From NCBI RefSeq assembly GCF_026571515.1, contig NW_026858411.1, positions 124,001 to 188,000 of the forward strand: a DNA stretch of 64,000 nt, read 5' to 3'. Below, piece after piece: positions 2,891 through 50,800 of this stretch; the stretch's first letter is position 1; the number at the start of each line of letters is the position of its first letter. The notes under the pieces were generated by a model that was not told the origin of the DNA, made no database searches, and was given only the letters and a program-made list of their open reading frames with translations. The stretch comes from Ruditapes philippinarum. Its lineage: Eukaryota. The translations under genes were made by a program, and so were the position numbers.

Positions 2891-3400
2891 CCAAATCATC
2901 TATTTACTGGAAATTTGAAATTTATCTAATTATGTAGATAATTATCTGTTACTTTAGTAACAAACACAAATGTTTTATAGATAAACAGATAATTATCTTT
3001 TATTTAACTGGTAAGTGTTGGTAGCCTTGGGCACTTTTTAGTGTTTTTCAAAGTTATCTAATTCGTTATTTATCAATATAACAGAAAAATATCTAGTTAA
3101 GTGTCTGTTATTTATCGTGTTAACACTTAAACTAACTAGTTAGTAGTATAGTTAATGTCATTATTATATGGTTAACTGTTGGCAGAAATATGCCACCATA
3201 CTTTGGCAAATACTATTTAAACATAATCAATTATCTCGTATCGTCTTAAGGTGCCAAAAAAACCAGCTACAAATACAGTAAGGTTGCACAAAAATAAAGA
3301 GGAGTGACCGCTTCGACCGTTTAGAAGTCTCAAAATACTTAAAATAGTTAACTGATGAATAAAAAAATATGTACTTTAACTTTATCGATTTCTGTAGTAT

Positions 3401-4202
3401 TGGGGCAGAATCATAGCCACTATATGACATTTTTGTAATATGCTGGGTTGGGGTAGAGAGCCCTTGTTTATGGCATATGCCACAGTCTTTCAAAAATAAT
3501 TAGAGTATTCACTTATAATTTGAACTAAAAAGCCACTGGCTTATATTCTGGGTTAGCATGCCGGCTTAAGCAGAAGTAAACATTTAAGCACAAACGTGGT
3601 CTCTGTAATAGAAAATTAACATTTGGTACTGAAAAACCACTTAAAGTTAAGTATAGAGCTTGTATACGACGATTAGGGTAAAGGTGATAACAGGAATGGA
3701 AGTAGAGCCAGTATGGTGCATTGGGGCAGAATCATAGCCACTATATGACATTTTCGGTATGTGCTGGGTTGGGGTAGAGAGCCTTTATTTATGGCAAATG
3801 CTACAGTCTTACAAAAATAATTACAGTATTCACTTATAATTTGAATTAAAAAGCCACTGTCTTATATCCTGGGTTAGCATGCCGGCTTTAGCAGAATTCA
3901 ACATTTAAGCACAAAAGTGGTCTCTGTAATAGAACATTAACATTTGGTACTGAAAAACCACTGTGAGTTAAGTATAGAGCTTGTATACGACGATTAGGGT
4001 AGGGGTGATAACAGGAATGGAAGTAGAGCCAGTATGGTGCATTGGGGCAGAATCATAGCCACTATATGACATTTTTGTAATATGCTGGTTTGGGGTAGAG
4101 AGCCCTTATTTATGCCAAATGCCACAGTCTTACAAAAATAATTACAGTATTCACTTATAATTTGAATTAAAACGCCATTGTCTTATATCCGGGGGTAGCA
4201 TG
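3401..4202 (+). repeat. 321-bp tandem repeat, about 2.5 copies (left arm of the element)
   Basis: Units start with TGGGGCAGAATCATAGCCAC at 3401, 3722 and 4043 and are near-identical. Confidence 0.95.
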
Positions 4203-4249
4203 CCTAATTGTGTTGGTTTATGTTATTCTTATTTCTTTTTCTTTTTTAG

Positions 4250-5082
4250 GTACGTACAAGTATCGTGGGAGGAGTTATAAAGTTTGTCCGGTGGGCAACT
4301 GTGCCGCGATAGTAGCAGACGTCCCTCTCCACTTAAGAGGTAAAGGACACTGTTTCACGAGGACGGCCTCTGTTCGCCGGGCAAAAGAGGCCATCAAAGT
4401 GACAGATATGTCGTGGCTTATCCCACCTCCTTCCGAATCGGAAGATGGCAGCCGGTCAGACGATACTGAGGCACCTCCGTCAGTTGCATCGGACAGGGAT
4501 ATGAACGCCCGAAGGTTTACGCCCTTGGTGCCCCAGAAAGCTGACAAGGCCCGTGCACCAGTGGTTGTCACGAGAAGAAGACACTTATTAGATAATTGGG
4601 TCTCTCATCTGAAAAGTTCGATAGGTGGAGACGTCACAGGAGAAAGAGCAAGGGAGTATATGGGAATAATAAAAAGGTATCTTAGATATATTGACTGCTT
4701 GGACACTCCTTGTCATATATTAGAAAAATCAACCCCACAGGTGCTATTAAACTACTTTAAGTCACGTCAGACAGAAAAGTCGCCATATTGGGCAAAAAAT
4801 GTAATTGTAAACCTCAGTAAGTTTCTTTCGTATTTAGAATTTCGAGGGTTTTTACAACCAGGATCGGCACAGGGGCACCGAGAAAGATGCAAGGGCCTTG
4901 CCCTGAGCCTTTCAAAGGCGATCACAAAACGACGAGTAAATACGCAAACGAAACTAAGGAAGAGGATTCTAAAAATAGACAATAATGAGTTTAGTGACCA
5001 TATAAAATTCAGAAGTGCAATACGTTACATGGGTACCGAGTTTACAAAACTGACGCAACCGTTCCAGAAATTTTTGATTTGC
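4250..5082 (+). pseudogene. Element protein, N-terminal part: C2H2-like zinc finger plus helical domain resembling a tyrosine recombinase core-binding (SAM-like) domain
   Basis: Strong polypyrimidine/AG acceptor at 4248-4249. Contains CPVGNC-x9-H-x5-H. The segment LLDNWVSHL..RAREYMGIIKRYLRYI..NYFKSRQTEKSPYWAKNVIVNLSKFLSYL resembles integrase N-terminal helices by eye. The frame is interrupted at 5083 by a retroelement. Confidence 0.6.
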
Positions 5083-6481
5083 AAAAAATATGATAAACAA
5101 GATCAACAAGGAAAGGCGGCGTTCAATGAACGCATCCCCCACATGACCCTGCAACAAGAACCAATGGCAAGGAGCCCAGGGGGACCCCAAACAAAAACAG
5201 GACAGGGCAAAGACAGAGCACGGACAGGTTAATCATTAAATGATAATTAATTTGTAACTGATTAGGAATTCAAAGAAAATAAAAATAGGCCCACAAAGGG
5301 GAAGGGGACAGGTGACCGGGGGAGGGTGTGGGGAGTAATCAAAGAAATAAAAACTAGAGGCAATGGGGAAGATACTTACCGTAGACGAGAAAACAACAAG
5401 GGACACAAGCAAAAGTGTCACCAAAACAGTATGAAACAACATAAGACATACATCTGAGGAACACAGTGGGGCGCCGCCTTGGAACGGTCAGCAGCATAAT
5501 AATGACTGCTGGGGAGTTTAAACCGGTTAATGGTGCACCAAACCTCGCTCTTAGCCCCACCATGTTCCTATAAACGAGACAGTGTAAATAAAATGAATCC
5601 CCGCCAAGTGAAATTCTAACAGTTGTCATGGTTACAAAAGGTTAAATAAGTAAAACACTAAAATGATCATGTAGAAACATATAAAAGTAAACCCAATGAC
5701 CATAACAAAAGTACTCAATGTCCTAAAGGAAGACAGAGCAACAAGAAAATCACCTACAAGGGCCGACGAAGCAAGGCAGAAGACGAACATTAAGACAATT
5801 CAGTCCCAAAGGGCTTTACGAACTATCCATCATAGAGTCTCCCACTTGGTCCGTCAGATGCAATCAAAAGAGGAAAGCGTAGTGTCCAACTGTAAAAGGG
5901 TTGAACACTAAACATGCAGTATGTCTTAAAATAGTAGGGTCATAACCTCTTTTAATAAAACGTTTAATGATTTTAGTAAAAACAGCAGAAAAATTACCAT
6001 GACCCAAAATCTTACGAAGTTTGTAAATCACATCGCCATAAAAACCAGGCTGGCTAATCCCTTGTCGCAGAAGAGTTTTTAAATCACTATTGAATTTGGA
6101 AATTAAATCAAAGTTACGATTGTAAAATTAAGTAAAATATTTCCGTAATTTATGATAGCGGTAGCCCTGTTTTAGAAGCTTGCTGGTAATAAAAATATTC
6201 CGCTCGTTGAAATCCTTTACGTTGCTACAAGCTCTAGCGAATCTAATTAACTGGGAAACATAAACCCCGTAAGATGTTGCATGGGGTACGTCTCCATCAA
6301 AATGTGGATAATTAACTATACAAAAGTCAAAGTCATCTCTTTTATCATAGATTTTCGTGTGAATAGAATTGTTGTTGATAGTAATATGAAGATCCAAAAA
6401 TGATGTACTAAAATTTGAAGAGTTCGTTTTATTAAGTTGTAGTTCATGCGGATAAATGTCAGACACCATTTGATCAAAATA
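5083..6481 (-). mobile_element. 5'-truncated Penelope-like retroelement (Naiad/Chlamys-like RT C-terminus plus 3' UTR), decayed
   Basis: Minus-strand translation YFDQMVSDIYPHELQL..SFLDL..YDKRDDFDF..YGVYVSQLIRFARAC..KLRKYFT*FYNRN..HTACLVFNP..DSMM is typical of PLE RT thumb/C-terminus, with no C-terminal GIY-YIG. In-frame TAA at 6128. The 3' end is defined by a near-identical solo fragment at 21664-21728. Confidence 0.8.
5779..5842 (-). ncRNA. SECIS-like hairpin (form 2) at the end of the retroelement ORF, with the 3' core GA mutated
   Basis: Minus strand reads GGAGAC tct ATGAT GGATAGTTC gt AAA GCCC ttt GGG act GAATTGTCT TAAT gttc GTCTTC. This gives helix I, an AUGA core, a 9-bp helix II, unpaired AAA and an apical ministem. 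The 3' side has TAAT where TGAT is expected. Confidence 0.6.
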
Positions 6482-6759
6482 CTATCTTCAGTTCCATTGA
6501 AGAACGTAGTTACACTAAAGGTAAAACTGTGAGAAAGCGGCGCAGTTGGACGGCACATGCCGAGAATGATTTTTCAATGGATTTCAAGTATGAAATCGAT
6601 TTGTCCTCCGAGTTGAATAAAAGACCAAACAAGACAGGCATCACTGTCAAACTGGACCAAATGCCTAGTCTGAAAGAAAAGTGGGAGTCTTTGTCCGTTG
6701 ACAATATTAAAGACAAAATATGGACCCTGGCTAAAAGAAAACAAAAATTGAATCGCTAA
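6481..6759 (+). pseudogene. Element protein, C-terminal part (Myb/SANT-like RRSWT..IKDKIW segment)
   Basis: Same reading frame as 4250-5082 once the retroelement is removed: ..FQKFLIC|TIFSSIEERSYTKGKTVRKRRSWTAHAENDF..IKDKIWTLAKRKQKLNR*. Confidence 0.55.
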
Positions 6760-6780
6760 GGAAAAAAAAAGACTGTATTC

Positions 6781-7440
6781 AATTTTGTTATGATTTGGAC
6801 TGGACCCCTAGGGTTAGCTGATAAAGGGTCCAGTCTGGACTATGTGTCTCTAAATTTAAAAAAAAAAATCATAAATAGTAAAAAAAGAAAATAAAACAAT
6901 CAAGAAATAGAAAAAATATTAGATGATTTTTGTTGGAATTTTGTGTATATTGTTGATTTATTTATTTTTGTTTTATTTTTGTTATGATTTGGACCGGACC
7001 CCTAGGGTTAGCTGATAAAGGGTCCGGTCTGGACTACGTGTCCCTAAATTTAAAAAAAAAAATCATAAATAGTAAAAAAAAAACATAAAACAATCAAGAA
7101 ATAGAAAAAATATTAGATGATTTTTGATGCAATTTTGTGTGTATTGTTGATTTATTTATTATGTTTTATTTTTGTTAAGATTTGGACCGGACCCCTAGGG
7201 TTAGCTGATAATGGGGCCGGTCTGGACTTCGTGTCCCTAAATTTAAAAAAAAAAACCAATCATAAATAGTAAAAAAAGGCACATTAAACAATCAAGAAAT
7301 AGAAAAAAATATTAGATGATTTTTGTTGCAATTTTGTGTATATTGTTGATTTATTTATTTTTGTTATATTTTTGTTATGATTTGGACCGGACCCCTAGGG
7401 TTAGCTGATAAAGGGTTCAGTCAAGACTTCATGTCTATAA
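6781..7440 (+). repeat. ~195-bp tandem repeat (about 3.3 copies), each unit with a GC-rich hairpin
   Basis: GGACYGGACCCCTAGGGTTAGCTGATAA.. motif at 6797, 6991, 7184 and 7384, separated by A/T tracts. Confidence 0.95.
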
Positions 7441-7469
7441 AGCAATGAACTTTTTCCCTTGCATGTCTG

Positions 7470-9075
7470 TAGGCCTCATCGTGGCGCAAGGGTGAACACA
7501 TAATCGCATTTCGTAACTCGTATTTGCAATTATGTGGCAAACTACAGACGAATTATATATTAAATGAAGAGCCACTGTCTTACACACTGGGGTAACATAG
7601 TTTGAAATATATTGTTAAAATGAAGAGCCACTGTCTTATTACATCCTGGGGTAACATAGTTTGAAACCCTTTTGTCATCGTCGGGGTCGAGGTAATGCAT
7701 ACTACTATGACTATGACTAGGCCTCATCGTGGCTCAAGGGTGAACACATAATCGCATTTCGTAACTTGTATTTGCAATTATGTGGCAAACTACAGACGTA
7801 TTATACATTAAATGAAGAGCCACTGTCTTACACACTGGGGTAACATAGTTTGAAATATATTGTTAAAATGAAGAGCCACTGTCTTATTACATCCTGGGGT
7901 AACATAGTTTGAAAACCTTTTGTCATCGTCGGGGTCGAGGTAATGCAAACTACCATGACTATGAGTCCGTCTGTGTGCAGTGTAAGTCTGTCAATATGCA
8001 TATGTCTCCAGTGTGTAATATCATGTCTTCTCTCTCTCCAGTGTGTATTATTATATCACCATTTCTCAAGTGTTGAATATTAAATATACTCTTTTTCTCC
8101 AGTGTGTATTACTATGTCCACTATCTCCATTATGTATTATAATATCATCATTCTATTCAGTGTGTGTTATGTTATATCGCCCTTTCTCCCAGTGTGTCTT
8201 ATGATATCTTTTTTCTCTCTAGTATGTATTATAATGCCATCGTTTTCATCAGTACGTATCATTATAACTTCTTTCTCTCCAGTGGGTATTGTTATGTATG
8301 TATGTAAGTATGTAAGAGCCATTCTCTGACACCCTGGGGTAACATTGTTTGAAATATAACATGTTAAAATGAAGAGCCACTGTCTGACACCCTGGGGTAA
8401 CATTGTTTGAAAGTATATTGTCATCGTCGGGGTCGGGGTTATGCATTCTTCTATGACTGTGAACAAGTCAGTTTGTATGCAGTGTAAGTCTGTCAGTATG
8501 CTTCTGTCTACAATGTGTAATATCATATCATCTTTTCTCTAGTGTGAATTATTAAATCATCATTTTCACCAGTATTTTTTTTTTTTCCTCCAGTGTGGAT
8601 TATAACGTCCCCGTTATCTCCAGTATGTATTATGATATCATCATTCTTTCCGGTGTGTATTATTATATATAGCTCTCACCAGTGGGTATTATTATATCTT
8701 TTTTCCTCCATGTATGTATGCATGTTCATAGAAAAATATTATGTTAAAATGAAGAGCCACTGTCAGACACACTGGGGCAGCACCCTTCCAGCACCGGTGC
8801 GGAGCCAGGTGTCTTGCTCATCTATATATCTCGAAGAAATCGGAGAGCCACTGTGTGACACCCTGGGGTAGCATTGTTTGAAATATTATATGTTAAAATG
8901 AAGAGCCACTGTCAGACACCCTTGGGCAGAAACCCTTCCAGCACCGGTGCGAGCCAGGTGTCTTGCTCATGTATACATCTCGAAGAAATTGAAAAGCCAC
9001 TGTCTGACACCCTTGGGTAGCATTGTTTGAAATATCATATGTTAAAATGAAGAGCCACTGTCAGACACCCTGGGG
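7470..9075 (+). repeat. Right-arm array: 11 copies of AGAGCCACTGTCTGACACCCTGGGG-type sites, plus a ~250-bp duplication and a degenerate ~30-bp minisatellite
   Basis: TGGGG/TTGGG cores at 7588, 7647, 7836, 7895, 8335, 8393, 8773, 8864, 8922, 9013 and 9071. tctccagtgtgtattat-type repeats at about 7990-8300 and 8510-8710. Confidence 0.92.
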
Positions 9076-9589
9076 ATGTGGATAGAAAATGCTAGAATTG
9101 CGAAATTTACCTTTAGGTTAATTTAAAATCTTTCCTAGCTTTTATAATTCGACTCTTATTGAAAGGACTACATGAAATTTATGATATTATACTGATAAAT
9201 TTGATGATAAACAACAAAAAGTGCTTGGTATAAATGCAATGGTGTGATATTGTTTCATGTGCAAGCGAATAGGGTGTAAAATACATTCACAACAGCGAGC
9301 TCAATATGGTCTCTAAATAACACAGCTCTGAAAAATTGTAATACATGTATACTTAGAAAACGATGTCAATGAATAACTTATTTGTGATGAAGGTGGATAT
9401 ATCTTTAACTGAATTATTTTAAAGAATTTCAAGTCATAAACATTATTTCGGTTTTAAATCTTTCCTTAAGAAAATTGATCATGTTATCCTATTCTTTTCC
9501 AATTTTCAGTCCGAATCTTCATATTGTGATTCAAAACAAGTTGTTAAGTAAAATACACGAATAGAAACCGTGGCAATGAGAGATACACC

Positions 9590-11220
9590 TGTCATGTATC
9601 ATATCAAGCTTCGCTATAATTGTCATGAATCATATCAAGCGTCGCTATAATTGTCATTTACCTATCAAGCGCCCCCTCATTATCATGTATCGTATCAAGC
9701 GTCGCTATAATTATCATTTATCGTATCAAGCGTCGCTATAATTATTATGTATCGTATCATGCTTCGCTATAATTGTCATGTTTTGTATGAAGCTTCGCTA
9801 TAATTATCATTTATCGTATCAAGCGTCGCTATAATTGTCATATATCGTATGAAGCGTCGCTATAATTATCATTTGTCGTATCAAGCGTCGCTATAATTAT
9901 CATGAATTGTATCAAGCGTCGCTATAATTATCATGTATCGTATTAAGCGTTCGCTATAATTATCACTTATCGTATCAAGCACCGCTATTATTGTCATGTA
10001 TCGTATCAAGTGTCGCTATAATTATCATTTATCGTATCAAGCGTCGCTATAATTATCATGTATCGTATCAAGCGTCGCTATAATTATCATGTATCGTATC
10101 AAGCGTCGCTATAATTATCATTTATCGTATTAAGCGTCGCTATATTTATCATGTATCGTATCAAGCGTCGCTATAATTGTCATTTACCTATCAAGCGCCC
10201 CCTCATTATCATGTATCGTATCAAGCGTCGCTATAATTATCATGTATCGTATCAAGCGTCGCTATATTATCATTTATCGTATTAAGCGTCGCTATATTTA
10301 TCATGTATCGTATCAAGCGTCGCTATAATTATCATTTATCGTATCAAGCGTCGCTATAATTATCATGTATCGTATCAAGCGTCGCTATATTATCATTTAT
10401 CACAGGAACTTGAAATTCTATCAAATAACCAATATTAATGATAATATCCAAATATACCCCCTATATACTATAAATAAACAGGAACTTGAAATTCTATCAA
10501 ATAACCAATATTAATGATAATATCCAAATATACCCCCTATATACTATAAATAAACTTATTTATAGTATATAGGGGGTATATTTGGATATTATCATTAATA
10601 TTGGTTATTTGATAGAATTTCAAGTTCCTGTGCATTTATCGTATTAAGCGTCGCTATATTTATCATGTATCGTATCAAGCGTCGCTATAATTATCATTTA
10701 TCGTATCAAACGTCGCTATAATTATCATGTATCGTATCAAGCGTCGCTATAATTATCATGTATCGTATCAAGCTTCGCTATAATTATCATGTATCGTATA
10801 ATGCGTCGCTATAATTATCATGTATCGTATCAAGCGTCGCTATAATTATCATGTATCGATCAAGCGTCGCTATAATTATCATGTATCGTATCAAGCGTCG
10901 CTATTATTATCATGTATCGTATCAAGCGTCGCTATAATTATCATTTATCGTATCAAGCGTCGCTATAATTATCATTTATCGTATCAAGCGTCGCTATAAT
11001 TATCATTTATCGTATCATGCTTCGCTTTAATTGTCATGTATCGTATGAAGCTTTGCTATAATCATTATTTATCGTATCTAGCGTCGTTCTTATTATCATG
11101 TATCCTATCAAGCGTCGCGTTAATTGTCATGTATGGTATCAAGCGTCGCGGTAATTGTCATGTAAAGTATCAAGCACCGCGAAAATTGTCATATATATTG
11201 TCAAGCGTCGCGTTTATTGT
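9590..11220. repeat. 30-bp CpG-rich minisatellite (TATCGTATCAAGCGTCGCTATAATTATCAT)
   Basis: Dozens of near-identical tandem units, interrupted at 10401-10632. Confidence 0.97.
10401..10632. mobile_element. Fold-back MITE with 77-bp TIRs (CACAGG..CCTGTG), 7-bp TSD and a duplicated left arm; possibly P-superfamily
   Basis: TSD CATTTAT at 10394-10400 and 10633-10639. Arms at 10401-10477 and 10478-10553 (direct copy), a 2-nt loop, then the inverted arm 10556-10632. Confidence 0.8.
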
Positions 11221-11898
11221 CAGGTATAAAACTAATTAAACTTCAGATAGCACAAACAGGATTTCTTAGTTTTTACACATAAAAAAATTACGGTATACAA
11301 CATTTCTAAGTGTAAATATATGACACCCTAGGGATGATTAGCCGATTATGCTAATTTGAAAGTCAGTTACTGGTTCAAAAGTACTGTCACAATCATGCAA
11401 TCACTTTCCAGTGGTAGTGTCTCAAAACTTCGATATATCTTTGTGAACAAAGAATAATATACAATTACCTTGTTTCCGGGCATGGAAGCAACTTCATCTG
11501 TTTCAGTTGAGTAATAAAGAAGTGAAAGAATTAAAGTTAAGTACTTCAGAGCTTCACATCGTGTAAGATAATAATCAAAATACATGTAAAATTAGGCGTA
11601 TAGCATTTGGCGAAAAAAAAAATTCACTTCGTTTGGAAAACAATAGACCATATAAAAATGTGTAAAATATATCTCCCGTCAAAAGAATAAATATGCATAA
11701 AACAGGATAAGGAAGGGAAAACAATAAAAAAGAGACTCTTATAGTAAATTTATTGCGGCATAGTTTGATACATTCATTTAAACATTGCACATAAAAGAAT
11801 GCTTAGTCTTAAGAAAATAAATACTATTTTTGCGTTGCAATGCTTCAATGTGGAAATAACGTAAGCATTTGCGATTCTTGTATAAAACAATTACTTAC

Positions 11899-12074: not shown

Positions 12075-12362
12075 ATTTCAACTTCATGAATTCCCGATTT
12101 CATCACCGTGAATTCACCATGTTAGCTTTCGGGCATACGGAATTCACGATTTTAGCCTTGAGAACTCACAATTTCAAGTTAACTTTTTCACGATTTCAAC
12201 TTCATGATCTCACGATTCAACATTAAAAATTCAACATCGTGAATTCACGATTTCAATTTCACGATTTCAACTTCATGTACTCTTGATTTTAACTTCAAAA
12301 ATTCACAATTTCAACTTCATGAATTCATGATTTCAGCTTCACGAATTCACAATTAACTTCAT
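12075..12362. repeat. Degenerate ~22-bp tandem repeat (atttcaacttcatgaattcacg)
   Basis: About ten degenerate copies are visible. Confidence 0.85.
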
Positions 12363-40464: not shown

Positions 40465-43400
40465 TTAGACTCCGAATTCAATCGCAGATTTAACGAGATC
40501 CGGTTTAGTGCTGTCCTCCAACGTCAAAAGTGTTACCCATGAATCAGTCATCACCGATATTGGAACCTTGTCGTCAATTGGATGGTAGTCCTCGAAGAAC
40601 TTTTCATCCAATGGGCTGTTATTGTGACCGCCAGTCTTCAAAATGACCTCAAATTCTTCCTTTGTGATACTTCCATCATTGTTAGTATCAACAATGTTAC
40701 CAATCATATTATTGCACGTATACATCATCTTTCTAAACACCTTTTTATCTGTCTCCCATTTGTTGCTCATCCCCTCTATGAAATCAGATTCGGTCAGTTC
40801 AGATTTTCCAAAGAGAACACATTCAGTCCACCATTTTCCAAACTGATTCAGAATTGTCTTTTTTTCGGCATCACTTAGATGATTTAAGTTGCTAAACCTT
40901 GACCTGTTTTGGGAGAAGAAAACAAAACATGTCATGTTTGAAATGATCTACATACTAAATAAATCACAATTATAAGAATACGATAAACCCTTCACTCGTT
41001 GTAGTGTTATTACATTTGTTTATTCCCAATATTTAGAAATTCCCATGCTTGAGTATATTGTATTTGTAGGTACATTTATTCTTTATTAATATGAATAAAA
41101 CACGCACTTACATTTCATCGTATTAATTTAAAATGTTTTCCAGAAAACCGAATAAAACCCACGCTTTTGTATACTTAAATGTGTTTTTCGTCTTTATTTC
41201 ATTATAATAATAAAATCTTTCTTTTTGTATACATGTATTTGTTTAGAATTTTAAATATAATTGATTGTTCCCCTTATCATGACATAAAACTACACAAATT
41301 CCATACTACTCGATTTAATAATAAGATATAAGATTTAAGATAAGTCACGAATAATAACATTTAATGAGATCGAATTTGCAAAACACACTTTTATGCAATA
41401 GAAAGAAAAAGAATAAACAATCATCTAAAAATCTCATAGTTTCCAGTATCCTAGCTACTAGAAAGTTTATGTGCTTTGGTAAAAAGAATATAATAACTGT
41501 GAAATAACCTTTGCAGATCGCCATCGCTAAAGTCGACTTTACCATCCTCATTAATATCAAACCACGTGTACAATAATTTCCATTTAGATACTAGAAAATC
41601 TAACGCCTGAAATTAAAATACAGTTTGACTCGTATATTTACACGCAAGCAATTTGTATAACTTAGTGTTTTAAGAGTAAAAACTAGGCTTAGCAAATATT
41701 GTTTTTTACAGAAAATAACGTATCTCGTATCATAGTATGATGCCGATGGATTTGACAACGAGAACTAGCAACAAATACAATAAGGTTGTGCCAAAAGTAT
41801 AGTGTACGCTTTGTCTGTTCAAAAGTCTCAAAATACTTAGAATAGTTCAGGTAATTGGTTGTTATAAAGTTCCAATTTGTTGCTTTCTCAAAAAATGATT
41901 ATTTATAAAAAATATATTCTTTAACTTTAATCCATTTCAATAGAATTATAGATATGGATAGTTAATGAACTTACGTCATTATATCATTTACATGTACTAG
42001 AAATAAAGAAATTGCAAAACTTACCTTAATTTAAAATCGTTTCCCAGGTTTCATAATGAAAGAAGTACATATTAATTATTATATTATATTGATAATTTTG
42101 ATGACTAACAACAAAAGCTACCTGCTATTAACTGTTATGGTATGTTGCTCAGATAGAAGCGAATAAGGTGTTTGATACATTCACGACCGCGAGCTCAATA
42201 TGGTCTCCAAACAATACAGCTCGGAAGAATCGTTATATATTGATAGAAATATGTCAATGAATTCCTTCTTTGTGATGAATGCGGAAATATCTATAACTGA
42301 ATTCTTTTAAAGAATTTCAAGTCGTTAACAACTTTTTAGGTTTAGCATCTTAGGCTTTTTTTAGAAATTTTATCATGCTGTTTTCTTTTATTCTTATCCA
42401 ATTTTCAATCCTGATCTTTATATTTTGATTAAATTCTTAACTGAAATACATGAATAGAGATACATCTGTCATAAATCGTCTCAAGCGTCGCAATAATAAG
42501 CATGTATCGTATCAAGCATTGCAAAAATTGCCATGTGCATGTACATTGTCAAGCTTCGCGATATAGTTGTCATGCGTCGTATCAAGCATCGTGAAATTGG
42601 CATGTATTGTATCAAGCATCACTATAATTATCATGTATTGTATCAAGCATCGCGAAAATTATCATGAATTGTATTAAGCATCGCTATAATTATCATGTAT
42701 TGTATCAATCGTCTATATAATTATCATGCATTTTATCATGCATCGCGAAATTTGCCATGAATTGCATCAAGCGTCGCTATAAATCTCATGTATAATATCA
42801 AGTTTCGCGAAAATTGTCACGTGTTGTATCGTCATGTACCGTATCAAACATCGCTATAATTATCATGTATTGCATCAAGCATCGCGAAAATTATCATGAG
42901 TTGTATTCTGCATCGCAAAATTATGTCATATATTGTATCAAGCATTGCGAAAATTGTAATGTTTATTGTCAAGCATCGCGGTAATTGTCATTTATGGCAT
43001 CAAGTGTCGCTTTTAGGGCCATGTTTCGTATCAAGCATTTGTGAATATTGTCATGTTTATTGTCAAGAGTCGCGATAGTTGTCATTTCAAGCCAAACGGC
43101 ATTTTGCCAGGTAATGTATCACCGGATTCGTGTTACGTGTTATGTGTGGACATCCAAATGAAACTTATTATACTTAAGATGGAACCAACCTGATTTCGTA
43201 CATATTTTACATATGAGAATGTAATGATTAGTAAAAATATGTGACACCTTATAGATGGTAAGCATATTTATCTAATTGTGCTGATTCGAATGTTAGTTAC
43301 AATAACAAAAGTTCTGTCACAGTCACACAAACATTTTACACTGATTTTGTCTCAATAATGGCAAGGAAACAATATGTCTTCTGAACAAAGAATAATATAC

Positions 43401-47890: not shown

Positions 47891-50800
47891 TTAGACTCCG
47901 AATTCAATCGCAGATTTAACGAGATCCGGTTTAGTGCTGTCCTCGCACGTCAAAAGTGTTACCCATGAATCAGCCATCACCCTTATTGGAACCTTGCCGT
48001 CAATTGGATGGTAGTCCTCGAAGAATTTTTCATCCATTGGGTTGTTGTTGTGACCGCCAGACTTCAAAATGACACTGAATTCTTCCTTTGTGATACTTCC
48101 ATCATTGTTAGTATCAACAATGTTACCAATCATATCATGGCACGTATACATCATCTTTACAAACACATTTTTATTTGTCTTCCATTTGTTGCTCATCAGC
48201 TCTATGAAATCAGATTCTGTCAGTTCAGATTTTCCAAAGAGAAGACATTCAGTCCACCATTTTCCAAACTGATTCAGAAGTGTCTTTTTTTCGTCATCAC
48301 CTAGATGATTTAAGGTAATAAACCTAGACCTGTTTGGGAGGAGAAAGCAACGTGTCGTGTGTGAAATTATCTACATATTGAATAAATCACAGTTAAGTCA
48401 TTCACTTATAATCTTTGTAGTGTTATTACAAGTGTTTATTGTCAATACTTGAGAGAAAAAACACGATTGGGTATATCGTCTTTAAAGGTGCATTTATTCT
48501 TCATTAATATCATGAATAAAACACGTACTTCAGTTTTATCGTATTATAATGTATTTCAGATAATCGAATAAAACCCACGCCTTTGTATATTTAAAAGTGT
48601 TTTTCGTATTTATATTACATGTATTTAAATAAAATATTTGCTTTTGTATATTGGTTAAGAAATTCTCCCTGATAATGAAATAAATAACTGACCGGCTTTT
48701 GTATATTTGTTTGTTCCCCTAATCATGAAATAAAAAATAATGACGAAAAATCGATCTTATTCAATTTTTTATTTGATTAGATAAATCACGAATAATATCA
48801 TTTAATGAGATCAAATTTGCGAAACATACTTTTATGCAAGTTTGTATTTCAAAAGAAAGAAAAGGAACAAACAATCAACCAAAAAAATCTGATAATTTGC
48901 AGTATCCTAGCTACTCGAAAGTTTATTTTCTTTAAAATTTATTTATTTAAAGATTATAATAACTGTGAAATAACCTTTGCAGATCGCCATCGCCAAAGTC
49001 GACTTTACCATCTTCATTAATATCAAACCACGAGTACCATAATTTCCATTTAGATACTAGAAAATCCAAAGCCTGAAATGGAAATACAATTTGACTCGTA
49101 TATTTAAACGCAGACAATTTGTATAACTTAGTAAGTGTTTTAAGAGTTAAAATTAGACATATTCGGTAACTTTAGCAAATATTGTTTATTTGTTGTTTTT
49201 TTTCCAGAAAAATAACTTATCTCGTATCATCGTATGATGCCGATGGATTTAACAACGAGAACTCGCTACAAATACAATAAAGTTGTGCCAAAAGTATAGT
49301 GGCCGCTTTGTCTGTTCAAAAGTCTCAAAATACTTAGAATAGTTCAGGTAATTGGTTGTTATAAAGTTCCAATTTGTTGCTTTCTCAAAAAATGATTATT
49401 TATAAAAAAAATATGAACTTTAACTTAAATGGATTTTCTATAGAATTAGAGATGTGGATAGTTAATGAACCTACGTCATTATATCGTTCACATTTACTAG
49501 AAAAATACTACAAATTGCAAAACTTACCTTCATTTAAAATCTGTCCCATGTTTCATAATTCGACTTTGTATTGAGAGGACTACATGTATATTATGATATC
49601 ATATTGATAAATATATTATTATATGATGATATATTACAAAAACTTACAGCTATTAAATGTTAAAATAGAGAAAAACGGAATCCCTAATGAAAGCTCATCA
49701 CGGCAAAATTGAAATGTTGCAGGCTCGGTTTGATTGAGCCTGTTCATGGACGGTACTGCCACGTGTGCACTACCGTCCACGCCCACTAGCACCGGCTGAA
49801 GCAGAATTCAACATTAAAACACGAAAATTGTTAAATTTTGAATTTAGAAACATCCGCAGATGTGTTCATACATCGGCTATCATAGAACATACAATGTGAC
49901 ACAGTAGAGCCATTCCATAAAAAAGCTGCGTATGGCCCCCAATTAAAAACCGCCATTAAAAACAAATATGTAAAACAATGAGCGGAACTAAATAAAATGG
50001 AATTTTGAAAGGGGATCTGAGGTTATGAAGCCTGCATATCACAGACAAGTGTGATATTGCTTAGATGAAAGCAAATATGGTGTTTGACACATTCACGACC
50101 GCGAGCTCAGTATGGTCTCCAAATAAAACAGCTCGGAAGAATCGTTATATTCTACGAAAAACGGTTTCAATGAATTCCTACTTAGTGATGAAAGTGGAAG
50201 TACCTATAACTGAATTCTTTTAAAAAAATTCAAGTCATAATTATCTTATAGGTTTTGCTTATTATCTTATAAGTTTTCATATAGATATTTTATCATGCTT
50301 TTATTCTTATCTAATTTTAAATCCTGATCTACATATTTTGATTAATAAAAATGATATTAACCATATTTATCTAATTGTGCTGATTCAAATGTTAGTTACA
50401 ATAACAAAAGTACTGTCACAATCATACAATCATTTTACAGTGATTTTGTCTCAATAATGGCGAAGTAGTATTGGGAAGGAAACAATATGTCTTCGTGAAC
50501 AAATAAAAATATACAATTACCTTGTTAGAATTTGTTCCGGGCATAGAAGCAGCTTCCTCTGTTACAATTGAGAAATGAAAATGTGAAAGGATTAAGGTTA
50601 AGTACTTCAGAACTTCACAATGTCTTAGATAATAATCAAAATACGTGTGAAATTATGCGTAAAGCATTTGGCGAAAATGGAATTCAATTAGTTGAAAACA
50701 GTCCATATAAAATGTTTGTAAAATATGTTAAATATATCGTATCTTCCGTCAAAAATTAAATGGTAATACGTATTAAGGAAGGGAAAATAATAAAAATAAT

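What the first reader, a model, noticed from the sequence alone, without database searches (positions are those of the whole stretch)
3401..9075. Tyrosine-recombinase-like element whose arms are arrays of its own putative recombination site
Seen in sequence: the insertion is precisely delimited by TGGGG direct repeats, and empty sites exist in two paralogous introns. The right terminus GCCAC-N12-TGGGG recurs 11 times in the right arm, mostly as pairs 58-59 bp apart. It also appears in variant form in the left arm (about 3549, 3870, 4191). The 321-bp left repeats begin exactly at the TGGGG core. Internal sites at 8773 and 8922 read right-end+core+CAG(A/C)A, which is what a circular junction would look like. 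There are no terminal inverted repeats. Established: Cryptons and other YR elements integrate through a short crossover core instead of a DDE-type TSD. Inference: the arrays may be built by repeated site-specific recombination or circle re-integration, a cassette-like architecture I do not recognise from described Crypton groups.
Basis: partly seen in the sequence, partly recalled or inferred. Interest (0 to 1): 0.82.

Follow-up and report, generated by a model that had tools for sequence, protein, structure and literature searches.

The report
Dead clam Crypton-like recombinase element
This is a broken, truncated copy of a rare clam mobile element whose intact relatives encode a tyrosine recombinase surrounded by arrays of one conserved 24-base motif, which makes a candidate recombinase-site pair that could be tested at the bench.

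Summary

**What it is.** Window 3401-9075 is a 5.7-kb insertion that two paralogous segments lack. It is a remnant of a low-copy DNA element that encodes only a tyrosine recombinase (YR), i.e. Crypton-like in the broad sense. The genome is probably Ruditapes philippinarum.

**What the sister copies show.** Copies on C12074 and C5028 carry about 890 bp that this copy has lost to a nested retroelement (5086-6481). Those bases encode the YR catalytic domain. A family profile hits XerA at 5e-12, and an AlphaFold model matches integrases, Xer, lambda Int and Cre.

**The "left arm" is an intron.** The full gene has an upstream zinc-finger exon, so the 321-bp array lies inside its intron. The window copy starts in that intron and lacks exon 1.

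**The motif.** GCC-N3-GT-N4-CA-N3-TGGGKTA is conserved in arrays around YR genes of three families with only 35-42% protein identity. It is almost absent elsewhere in the genome (136 hits against 3 in the control).

**What is not reproducible.** Ends at TGGGG could not be reproduced. No other copy I could read ends at TGGGG. At least the C5028 left end is an artefact of a MITE and the contig start.

**Status of the mechanism.** Excision of a circle between two TGGGGCAG sites and re-integration at TGGGG fits the data but is inferred. Microhomology-mediated copying fits as well.

An unchecked first-stage note (s1-804200) may describe the same motif elsewhere in this genome.

The parts
3401..3405 (+). 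Left TGGGG. With 3399-3400 it forms ATTGGGG, which is shared by the flank and by the position before each internal 321-bp unit. It is the possible crossover or microhomology.
3399..4204 (+). 321-bp tandem array, 2.5 units at 92% identity. In full-length relatives it lies inside the intron between exon 1 and exon 2 of the recombinase gene. Each unit starts ATTGGGGCAGAATC (3399, 3720, 4041) and carries one 24-bp motif copy (3532, 3853, 4174).
4249..5085 (+). Exon 2, first part. A splice acceptor ttttttag lies just upstream. It encodes the second zinc-finger-like CxxxxC...HxxxxxxHC, an acidic linker and the SAM-like core-binding domain. It breaks off at ...TQPFQKFLICK, just before the first catalytic Arg motif (GARTG).
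5086..6481 (-). Nested, 5'-truncated copy of a very abundant retroelement (TE-X). It replaces about 891 bp that encode the whole YR catalytic domain in sister copies.
   Evidence: summed contig depth 1e5-1e6; common end at 5085/5086
6482..6759 (+). C-terminal end of the recombinase ORF, a conserved roughly 75-aa helical module that is 51% identical between families W and F17. Stop codon at 6757-6759.
6783..7416 (+). 194-bp x 3.2 A/T-rich array directly after the stop codon. Each unit holds an 11-12-bp palindrome (GGACCGGACCC...GGGTCCGGTC). It contains no 24-bp motif.
   Evidence: z = -3.3
7470..7964 (+). 248-bp x 2 blocks, each with a pair of class-A motif sites 56 bp apart (7571, 7627; 7819, 7875).
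8005..8720 (+). Two stretches of degenerate roughly 31-bp repeats (8005-8290, 8477-8720). Between them lies a class-A site pair (8318, 8376).
8740..9075 (+). 149-bp x 2.3 array that alternates class-B sites (8756, 8905, 9054) with class-A sites (8847, 8996). Class-B sites read GCCACTGTCAGACACNCTGGGG followed by CAG(C/A)A and an inverted copy of AGACACC-TGG about 28 bp downstream. Class-A sites are followed by TAGCATTGTTTGAAA. The copy ends inside the class-B site at 9054-9075.
9071..9075 (+). Right TGGGG, the last bases of the terminal class-B site.
41940..41961 (+). Paralogous empty site 1 (ATAGAATTATAG|ATATGGATAG).
49440..49461 (+). Paralogous empty site 2 (ATAGAATTAGAG|ATGTGGATAG).

Best explanation
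Window 3401-9075 is a dead partial copy of a low-copy DNA element of the clam that encodes only a tyrosine recombinase (Crypton in the broad sense).

**The full element.** It encodes a protein of roughly 680 aa, estimated from broken copies. The protein has two N-terminal zinc-finger-like modules, a SAM-like core-binding domain, a YR catalytic domain (Arg, Lys, Arg, His and Tyr kept; the first His of HxxR replaced) and a conserved C-terminal helical module. In this family (W) the gene is split by one GT-AG intron.

**The motif.** Around the gene lie same-strand arrays of a 24-bp motif, GCC-N3-GT-N4-CA-N3-TGGGKTA. They sit upstream or in the intron, and again downstream of the stop codon. I infer that this motif is the DNA site the recombinase binds. 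Class-B sites, which have an inverted half-site, would be the crossover sites. Class-A sites would be accessory sites, like the arm-type sites of lambda attP.

**Origin of the window copy (inferred).** Two directly repeated sites share TGGGGCAG: one in the intron array (ATTGGGG|CAGAATC) and one class-B site in the 3' array (CCCTGGGG|CAGMA). Recombination between them would excise a sub-genomic circle lacking exon 1. That circle would then integrate through the same core into a TGGGG-like target in non-coding DNA of a host gene paralogue.

**Later damage.** A retroelement then inserted and removed the catalytic domain.

**Shown versus inferred.** Shown: the YR identity of relatives, the gene structure, the losses in this copy, the exclusivity and conservation of the motif, and the insertion relative to paralogues. 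Inferred: motif binding, the crossover at TGGGG and the circle.
For: **YR identity**
- Sister copies carry about 891-920 bp between window 5085 and 6482. They encode LINSGARTG...SSHKT...HPF...TDNRTH...QLKHS...VMYD.
- The family profile hits XerA 5hxy at E 5e-12, with Arg I, Lys, Arg II and His aligned.
- 18 of 59 relatives hit PF00589.
- The AF2 model has pLDDT 84. Foldseek top hits are integrases, XerA/XerH, Tn1549 Int, lambda Int and Cre.

**Gene structure**
- Exon 1 (MEKVRNIYKCPVCDNLVKRLTPHMRRQH...LKG|gtaagt) lies upstream of the 321-bp array in C5028 and C4710. Diverged exon-1 matches precede a left-array unit in two C10817 loci.
- Intron-less families F17 and F20 read straight across the junction.
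- Copies keep the intron, which points to DNA-level copying.

**Motif**
- The same 24-bp module sits in arrays of different period (33, 46, 93, 149, 248, 321 and 336 bp) in three families whose proteins are 35-42% identical.
- Genome-wide the generic pattern gives 136 hits against 3 in the control. Family-specific patterns give 28/0 and 37/0.
- 27 of the 28 W-type sites lie inside copies of this element. F17 sites lie on YR-bearing contigs (C14609, C15046, C12708, C5911, C2228) and on C4710, which holds only an exon-1 fragment.
- Within an element the sites share the gene's strand, apart from one inverted block in L017.

**Ends and clustering**
- The 5-bp TGGGG at both ends, the terminal site being class B, and the internal class-B sites reading TGGGG+CAG(A/C)A like the left end all fit one core.
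- F17 copies on C15046 lie head to tail and are joined through site-bearing repeats.
- W and F17 fragments co-occur on C5911, C4710, C518 and C14609. This is expected if circles integrate into resident site arrays.
Against: - Only this one copy has ends at TGGGG.
- The C12074 copy ends at other points, possibly flanked by GCAAT.
- C5028 ends 34 bp earlier on the right; its left end is lost to a MITE and the contig start.
- C5911 and C518 end elsewhere.
- The empty paralogous sites read AGAG/ATAG, not GGGG.
- Left end and class-B sites share only CAG(A/C)A beyond the core.
- The inverted half-sites of class B are about 28 bp apart, not the 6-8 bp typical of YR core sites.
- No copy I read is free of stops or frameshifts. 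No circle junction or empty allele was seen among the listed joints of four DNA runs, which were short contigs only.
- F20-type arrays also occur on contigs with no YR hit (C10163, C3688, C11742, C12370). The motif can therefore persist as a plain satellite.
Confidence: 0.6

Rival explanations
1. The piece is a fragment of the recombinase element, but it was not placed here by the recombinase. It was copied in by microhomology-mediated template switching or repair (MMBIR/FoSTeS, or capture of extrachromosomal DNA). The process used ATTGGGG at entry and TGGGG at exit. On this view the arrays are ordinary tandem repeats.
For: - There is 7-bp and 5-bp microhomology at the two junctions.
- Every other copy has different, idiosyncratic ends.
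- The copy is non-functional and lacks exon 1.
- Unit numbers vary between copies, as in any satellite.
Against: - It does not explain why the right end falls in a class-B site, whose internal copies continue with the same CAG(A/C)A as the left end.
- It does not explain why the motif is conserved across families at 35-42% protein identity and nearly absent elsewhere.
- It does not explain the head-to-tail tandems or the co-clustering of families.
Confidence: 0.22
2. These are not mobile elements but a decaying host gene family (a domesticated recombinase). It would have spread by tandem and segmental duplication, and the motif arrays would be cis-regulatory or chromatin elements of those genes.
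For: - The gene has a spliceosomal intron.
- Copies cluster in a few contigs, partly in tandem.
- Two C5911 copies share the same flank, which indicates segmental duplication.
Against: - The window copy is a 5.7-kb insertion that two paralogues of the surrounding segment lack.
- Every copy I read has stops or frameshifts or is interrupted.
- Copies are dispersed over about 45 contigs.
- Several diverged families coexist, as transposon lineages do.
Confidence: 0.1
3. It is a derivative of a DIRS/Ngaro-type tyrosine-recombinase retrotransposon. The internal right-end+left-end sites would be the B1-A2 junction of split direct repeats.
For: The internal sites at 8773 and 8922 look like right end joined to left end over TGGGG+CAG(A/C)A. 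DIRS/Ngaro elements do keep such an internal junction (PMC13465315, background section).
Against: - No reverse transcriptase or RNase H lies within any copy of the element. The only RT-like ORF belongs to the nested, genome-wide abundant TE-X.
- The match to the left end stops after 5 bases, so there is no A2 repeat.
- Copies retain the intron.
- None of 59 relatives carries an RT domain.
Confidence: 0.03

Closest known systems
Crypton DNA transposons in the broad sense (Goodwin, Butler & Poulter 2003; Kojima & Jurka 2011, PMC3212892)
   Same: - The element's only gene is a tyrosine recombinase.
- It has no reverse transcriptase, no TIRs and no LTRs.
- A short (5-bp) direct repeat lies at the two ends of the one delimitable insertion. 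This matches the 4-6-bp repeats read as recombination microhomology in CryptonF and CryptonS.
- It is low in copy number and its boundaries are hard to define.
   Different: - The recombinase is not DUF3504 (CryptonA) and has no GCR1_C domain (CryptonF).
- It has two N-terminal zinc-finger-like modules and its own conserved C-terminal module.
- Arrays of a conserved 24-bp motif flank the gene. Kojima & Jurka report no terminal repeats of any kind in animal Cryptons.
Lambda-type integrases with arm-type sites in attP
   Same: The recombinase has extra N-terminal DNA-binding modules. Many same-sequence sites lie on both sides of the presumed crossover once the element is circular. Only a subset of sites (class B) has dyad symmetry. 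This is an analogy of mechanism only.
   Different: - It is eukaryotic.
- It has tens of sites in tandem arrays rather than five arm sites.
- The half-sites of class B are about 28 bp apart.
- No binding data exist.
DIRS/Ngaro tyrosine-recombinase retrotransposons
   Same: They also use a YR of the same superfamily, and they keep an internal sequence that resembles a circle junction.
   Different: There is no RT/RNase H/methyltransferase, no ITR+ICR and no split direct repeats. The intron is retained in copies.
Bacterial/archaeal Xer recombinases (XerA, 5hxy)
   Same: This is the best sequence-profile and structural match. It covers the SAM-like core-binding domain plus the catalytic domain, with Arg, Lys, Arg and His aligned.
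   Different: Identity is 12-15%. The first His of HxxR is replaced (T/G-D-N-R). The clam protein has long N- and C-terminal extensions and sits in a eukaryotic transposon context.

Membership tests
Tyrosine recombinase superfamily | Two-domain fold: SAM-like core-binding domain plus catalytic domain | tested here: met
   Tested on a relative, L010:1564-2700. AF2 pLDDT 84. Foldseek top hits are integrase 3nkh, XerA, Tn1549 Int, XerH, lambda Int and Cre, all at probability 1.00. Profile against XerA gives E 5e-12.
Tyrosine recombinase superfamily | Catalytic residues R-K-H-R-H/W-Y | tested here: inconclusive
   Relatives and sister copies keep Arg (GARTG), Lys (HKT), Arg (DNR), His (LKHS) and a Tyr (MYD). 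The Tyr lies beyond the aligned XerA stretch. The first His of HxxR is T/G. Activity is untested.
Tyrosine recombinase superfamily | Catalytic domain present in the window copy itself | tested here: not met
   About 891 bp between window 5085 and 6482 are replaced by TE-X, so all catalytic motifs are missing.
Crypton (broad sense) | YR is the only transposition gene; no RT or DDE | tested here: met
   ORF lists of C5028 and C12074 copies show only the YR gene. The rest of the element is tandem repeats. No RT or DDE Pfam hit in 59 relatives.
Crypton (broad sense) | No TIRs or LTRs; short 4-6-bp direct repeats at the ends | tested here: inconclusive
   No TIRs. TGGGG lies at both ends of the window copy. 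Other copies do not end at TGGGG, and the empty paralogous sites read AGAG/ATAG.
Crypton (broad sense) | Mobility: insertion absent from homologous sites, and dispersed copies | tested here: met
   Two paralogous empty sites. Copies or fragments lie on many contigs.
Crypton (broad sense) | Circular intermediate | not testable with these tools
   Only short assembled contigs of public runs were available. No 9075-to-3401 joint appears among the listed joints.
CryptonA | Recombinase matches DUF3504 (PF12012) | tested here: not met
   No DUF3504 hit in the window ORFs, the sister copies or 59 relatives. Eighteen of the relatives hit PF00589 instead.
CryptonF | C-terminal GCR1_C DNA-binding domain | tested here: not met
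   No Pfam hit on the C-terminal pieces. The model of the C-terminal module has no significant PDB match.
DIRS / Ngaro | RT/RNase H ORF plus ITR+ICR or split direct repeats | tested here: not met
   No RT in the element proper. The internal 'junction' shares only 5 bases with the left end. Copies keep the intron.
Described Repbase/Dfam family | Nucleotide or protein match to a curated consensus | not testable with these tools

The most novel reading that the evidence does not exclude
This would be a previously undescribed lineage of animal tyrosine-recombinase DNA elements. Its recombinase carries zinc-finger modules, and the gene is embedded in arrays of its own 24-bp binding or recombination site. 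Recombination between any two directly repeated sites would release sub-genomic circles, and these would re-integrate at a TGGGG core. That would explain the truncated copies with different ends, the head-to-tail tandems, the nesting of different families in one another's arrays and the stand-alone motif satellites. In effect it would be a eukaryotic cassette-like system with a readable recombinase-site code: three families, three site variants.
Probability: 0.3. Interest if true: 0.75.

Novelty: new variant of a known kind. Interest (0 to 1): 0.55.

Why it matters
Cryptons are the least understood class of eukaryotic DNA transposons. Their ends are hard to define and their recombination sites are unknown. 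Kojima & Jurka (2011) found no terminal repeats at all in animal Cryptons.

Here one short motif co-varies with recombinase family and is practically exclusive to these loci in a 1.4-Gb genome. That gives a concrete candidate protein-DNA pair that can be tested by gel shift and by plasmid recombination assays.

If the motif is the site, the family would also show how a site-specific recombinase can seed satellite arrays and generate sub-genomic circles in an animal genome.

The window copy itself has no biological activity. It is a fossil, useful only because it is the one insertion with both junctions and empty sites readable.

Tried and rejected
**Protein searches that found little**
- Pfam on all window ORF pieces and sister-copy pieces gave nothing at E <= 1 except noise.
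- The word-index protein search gave only 2 hits.
- A single-sequence PDB search gave none. Only the profile worked.
- The model of the C-terminal module (pLDDT 84) has no PDB match better than E 2.6. The weak POU/HMG-like rows are not evidence.

**Structure of the sites**
- I tested whether the sites are single-strand hairpins. Class B gives z = -1.0, +0.3 and -1.9. Class A gives +1.3 and the left-end site +0.4, none significant. Only the palindrome of the 194-bp unit stands out, at z = -3.3.
- Rfam and tRNA scans of the arms found nothing there. The only hit lies in TE-X.
- No TIRs.

**Alternative readings of the ends**
- The Ngaro/DIRS split-direct-repeat reading is rejected, because the internal junction matches the left end for only 5 bases.
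- Target similarity to the motif beyond TGGGG is 10 of 22 positions by my own count, which is about chance.
- A telomere link is rejected. (TTAGGG)n lies beside one F17 copy only.

**Reads and blocked tools**
- Reads from four DNA runs were available only as short Logan contigs. No empty allele and no circle joint appeared among the listed joints. This is no evidence of absence.
The right arm of the C14609 copy and the stand-alone arrays (C10163 and others) could not be read.
Flanks of homologues in other organisms could not be checked for the motif.

Full report
**Setting.** The window is C6898:124001-188000 of a 1.41-Gb, 15,874-contig assembly. A protein hit named Ruditapes philippinarum sits on a 569,185-bp contig, the length of C518. 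The genome is therefore probably the Manila clam.

**1. The observation.**

The stretch 3401-9075 contains the following, in order:
- a 321-bp x 2.5 array (3399-4204);
- an ORF (4210-5232, of which 4249-5085 is element-coding);
- a foreign block (5086-6481);
- the ORF tail (6482-6759);
- four kinds of tandem repeat: 194 bp x 3.2, 248 bp x 2, degenerate roughly 31-bp units, and 149 bp x 2.3.

GCCAC-N12-TGGGG with at most 1 mismatch occurs 11 times, against 0.27 expected. With N12-N15 there are 11 sites in the right part and 3 in the left, all on the + strand.

Both ends read TGGGG. Flank BLAST finds two paralogous segments without the insert. Their junctions are ATTATAG|ATATGGATAG (41951|41952) and ATTAGAG|ATGTGGATAG (49451|49452). 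So the insertion is real and its limits are good to within a few bases. The paralogues have AGAG/ATAG where the occupied site has GGGG. There are no terminal inverted repeats.

**2. What the protein is.**

Pfam finds nothing in the window ORFs. The genome holds few close copies: C12074 at 95% protein identity, C5028, C2348 and C4131. It also holds more distant families at 35-42% identity. I call these F17 (C14609, C15046, C7361, C518 and others) and F20 (C2072, C9273, C15268, C10602).

In C12074 and C5028, about 891-920 bp lie between the points that match window 5085 and 6482. They encode ...FQKFLICKVLINSGARTGVVSGMT...SSHKT...HPFVTKSGKPF...SPTDNRTHMVS...QLKHSMRIEKVMYD.

A full scan of 1.84 billion representative proteins found only 80 relatives at E <= 1e-3. 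Evidence from those relatives:
- 18 of 59 hit PF00589 and none hits DUF3504;
- their profile hits XerA (5hxy) at 5e-12, with Arg I, the beta-hairpin Lys, Arg II and His aligned, and the first His of HxxR replaced;
- an AF2 model of an F17 ORF (pLDDT 84) matches integrases, XerA/XerH, Tn1549 Int, lambda Int and Cre.

The family is therefore a tyrosine recombinase. The window copy has lost exactly that domain. The break at 5085/5086 lies just before GARTG.

**3. The nested block.**

Block 5086-6481 (TE-X) recurs in most loci I fetched. In four public DNA runs its summed contig depth is 1e5-1e6, against tens for the rest of the element. Hundreds of contigs end at 5085/5086. This is a common 3' end of a 5'-truncated retroelement on the minus strand. 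Its insertion coincides with the 891-bp loss.

**4. The "left arm" is an intron.**

The N-termini of the intron-less F17 and F20 proteins (MAKHREKYTCPVCK...HLKYWH... / MTKIRNSYRCPVCK...) match a segment upstream of the 321-bp array. The match is found in C5028 (L014 238-387) and C4710, with diverged matches in two C10817 loci.

In C5028 this exon ends ...VRLKG|gtaagt. The window's coding part starts ttttttag|GTACGTACAAG = (G)TYKYRG. The join reproduces ...LKG-xxxYRGRxYKxCP of the other families in phase. The 321-bp array therefore lies in a GT-AG intron of the recombinase gene.

The window copy, and apparently the C12074 copy, begins inside that intron and has no exon 1. In C5028 the intron has also picked up a roughly 387-bp repeat (thousands of genome candidates in the first look) and a 133-bp MITE. 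Retention of the intron in all copies argues for DNA-level copying.

**5. The motif.**

This is the strongest result. Arrays next to the recombinase genes of the three families all contain one 24-bp module:
- W: GCCACTGTCTGACACCCTGGGGTA
- F17: GCCCTTGTGCAACAAACTGGGTTA
- F20: GCCACCGTCCAGCAGTATGGGGTA

Thirteen positions are identical: GCC, GT, CA, TGGG and TA. The module sits inside repeat units of quite different length and flanking sequence (33, 46, 93, 149, 248, 321 and 336 bp).

Genome-wide counts:
- The W pattern has 28 hits against 0 in the control. 27 lie inside copies of this element.
- The F17 pattern has 37 hits against 0.
- The generic 13-position pattern has 136 hits against 3.

Sites share the gene's strand and lie both upstream (or in the intron) and downstream of it. 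In C14609, for example, they lie at 192481-194193 and 198541-198656 around an ORF region at about 194.9-197.3 kb. One inverted block lies at the far left of that copy.

DNA between families is otherwise not alignable. The motif is therefore maintained, and I infer that it is the recombinase's binding site. F20-type arrays also exist on contigs without a recombinase hit (C10163, C3688, C11742, C12370). These could be non-autonomous derivatives or plain satellites.

**6. Two classes of site in the window.**

Class A is GCCACTGTC(T/G)...CTGGGG followed by TA(A/G)CAT(A/T)GTTTGAAA.

Class B (8756, 8905, 9054) is GCCACTGTCAGACACNCTGGGG followed by CAG(C/A)ACCCTTCC.... It has an inverted copy of AGACACC-TGG about 28 bp downstream. 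In a C5028 unit this inverted repeat is a perfect 11-mer although the spacer has diverged.

The element ends inside a class-B site, right after TGGGG. The left end reads ATTGGGG|CAGAATC, and so does the start of each internal 321-bp unit.

A coherent but inferred model follows. Recombination between an intron site and a class-B site, which share TGGGGCAG, releases a circle. The circle re-opens at the same core when it integrates at a TGGGG-like target.

Supporting context:
- F17 copies on C15046 lie head to tail, with the right arm of one running into the left arm of the next through site-bearing repeats.
- W and F17 fragments share contigs C5911, C4710, C518 and C14609, far more often than chance in 15,874 contigs.

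**7. What speaks against a fixed TGGGG terminus.**

- C5028 ends at ...ATATCATATG, 34 bp before the equivalent of the window's end. Its left side runs into a MITE and the contig start.
- The two C5911 copies share one flank, so they are a segmental duplication. They end at ...TATATGTTA.
- The C518 fragment ends at ...CATTGTTTG.
- The C12074 copy sits in an unrelated roughly 190-bp repeat. It runs from about window-equivalent 3885 to 7987, perhaps flanked by GCAAT.

Some of these ends may be later truncations. Even so, the TGGGG rule rests on one case. Template switching through ATTGGGG/TGGGG microhomology would give the same product.

**8. Comparison with known elements.**

The element meets the working definition of a Crypton (PMC3212892; PMC13465315, background section). 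It is a eukaryotic DNA transposon with a YR as its only enzyme, without TIRs or LTRs, and with short direct repeats at its ends that reflect microhomology with the target.

It is not CryptonA, because there is no DUF3504 match. It is not CryptonF, because there is no GCR1_C domain.

Kojima & Jurka state that they found no terminal repeats of any kind in animal Cryptons. Arrays of a conserved site around the gene are therefore not part of the described picture. I could not consult Repbase or Dfam.

The element is not DIRS/Ngaro: no RT, no split repeats, intron retained.

The nearest mechanistic analogy is lambda-type attP with arm-type sites. That is an analogy only.

**9. Verdict.**

The feature is real and the class was named correctly. 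The architecture needs re-reading: a fossil fragment, an intronic array and a lost catalytic domain. The motif-recombinase link is upgraded to a family-wide feature. The recombination-built-array idea remains untested.

**Limits.** Reads were available only as short contigs.

Noticed in passing
window 5086-6481 (minus strand); SECIS-like hit at 5780-5841: TE-X is an extremely abundant 5'-truncated retroelement. Summed contig depth is 1e5-1e6 in four runs, and many contigs share an end at 5085/5086. It carries a match to Rfam SECIS_1 at 33 bits, just under the gathering score of 35. A first-stage note (s1-804416) flagged the same spot.
   Followed up: partly
window 9555-11300: A large 31-bp satellite (TCATGTATCGTATCAAGCGTCGCTATAATTA, about 60 or more units in several blocks) lies just downstream of the insertion.
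   Followed up: no
L017 43-2880 (C14609:188043-190880): 2.7 kb of 21-bp CCTTACCCAC-type satellite ends in short (TTAGGG)2-3 runs. This directly abuts an inverted block of W-like motif sites at the far left of an F17 copy. No other fetched locus has telomere repeats.
   Followed up: partly
G000:C7248:202379-206720: Five tandem copies at 1006-bp spacing of an open 132-aa frame without stops. It resembles the N-terminal zinc-finger region of the recombinase at 32-33% identity. It could be a domesticated or amplified DNA-binding module.
   Followed up: no
G000:C10163:127122-133353; also C3688, C11742, C12370: Dense arrays of the F20-type 24-bp motif, about 94-bp spacing and at least 22 sites in 6 kb, on contigs with no recombinase hit. 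These are stand-alone satellites or non-autonomous derivatives.
   Followed up: no
L014 394-780 and 838-970; L019 about 6130-6250: Two abundant short repeats: one of about 387 bp (3,476 first-look candidates) and a 133-bp MITE-like one. Both sit in the intron of the C5028 copy. The 133-bp one also splits the recombinase ORF on C15046.
   Followed up: partly
G000 contigs C5911, C4710, C518, C14609: Fragments of different recombinase families (W and F17) lie within a few kb of each other on the same contigs, sometimes head to head. These look like nests of these elements.
   Followed up: partly
window 12143-12354: A short 22-bp tandem repeat (TTCACGATTTCAACTTCATGA-like) unrelated to the element.
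   Followed up: no
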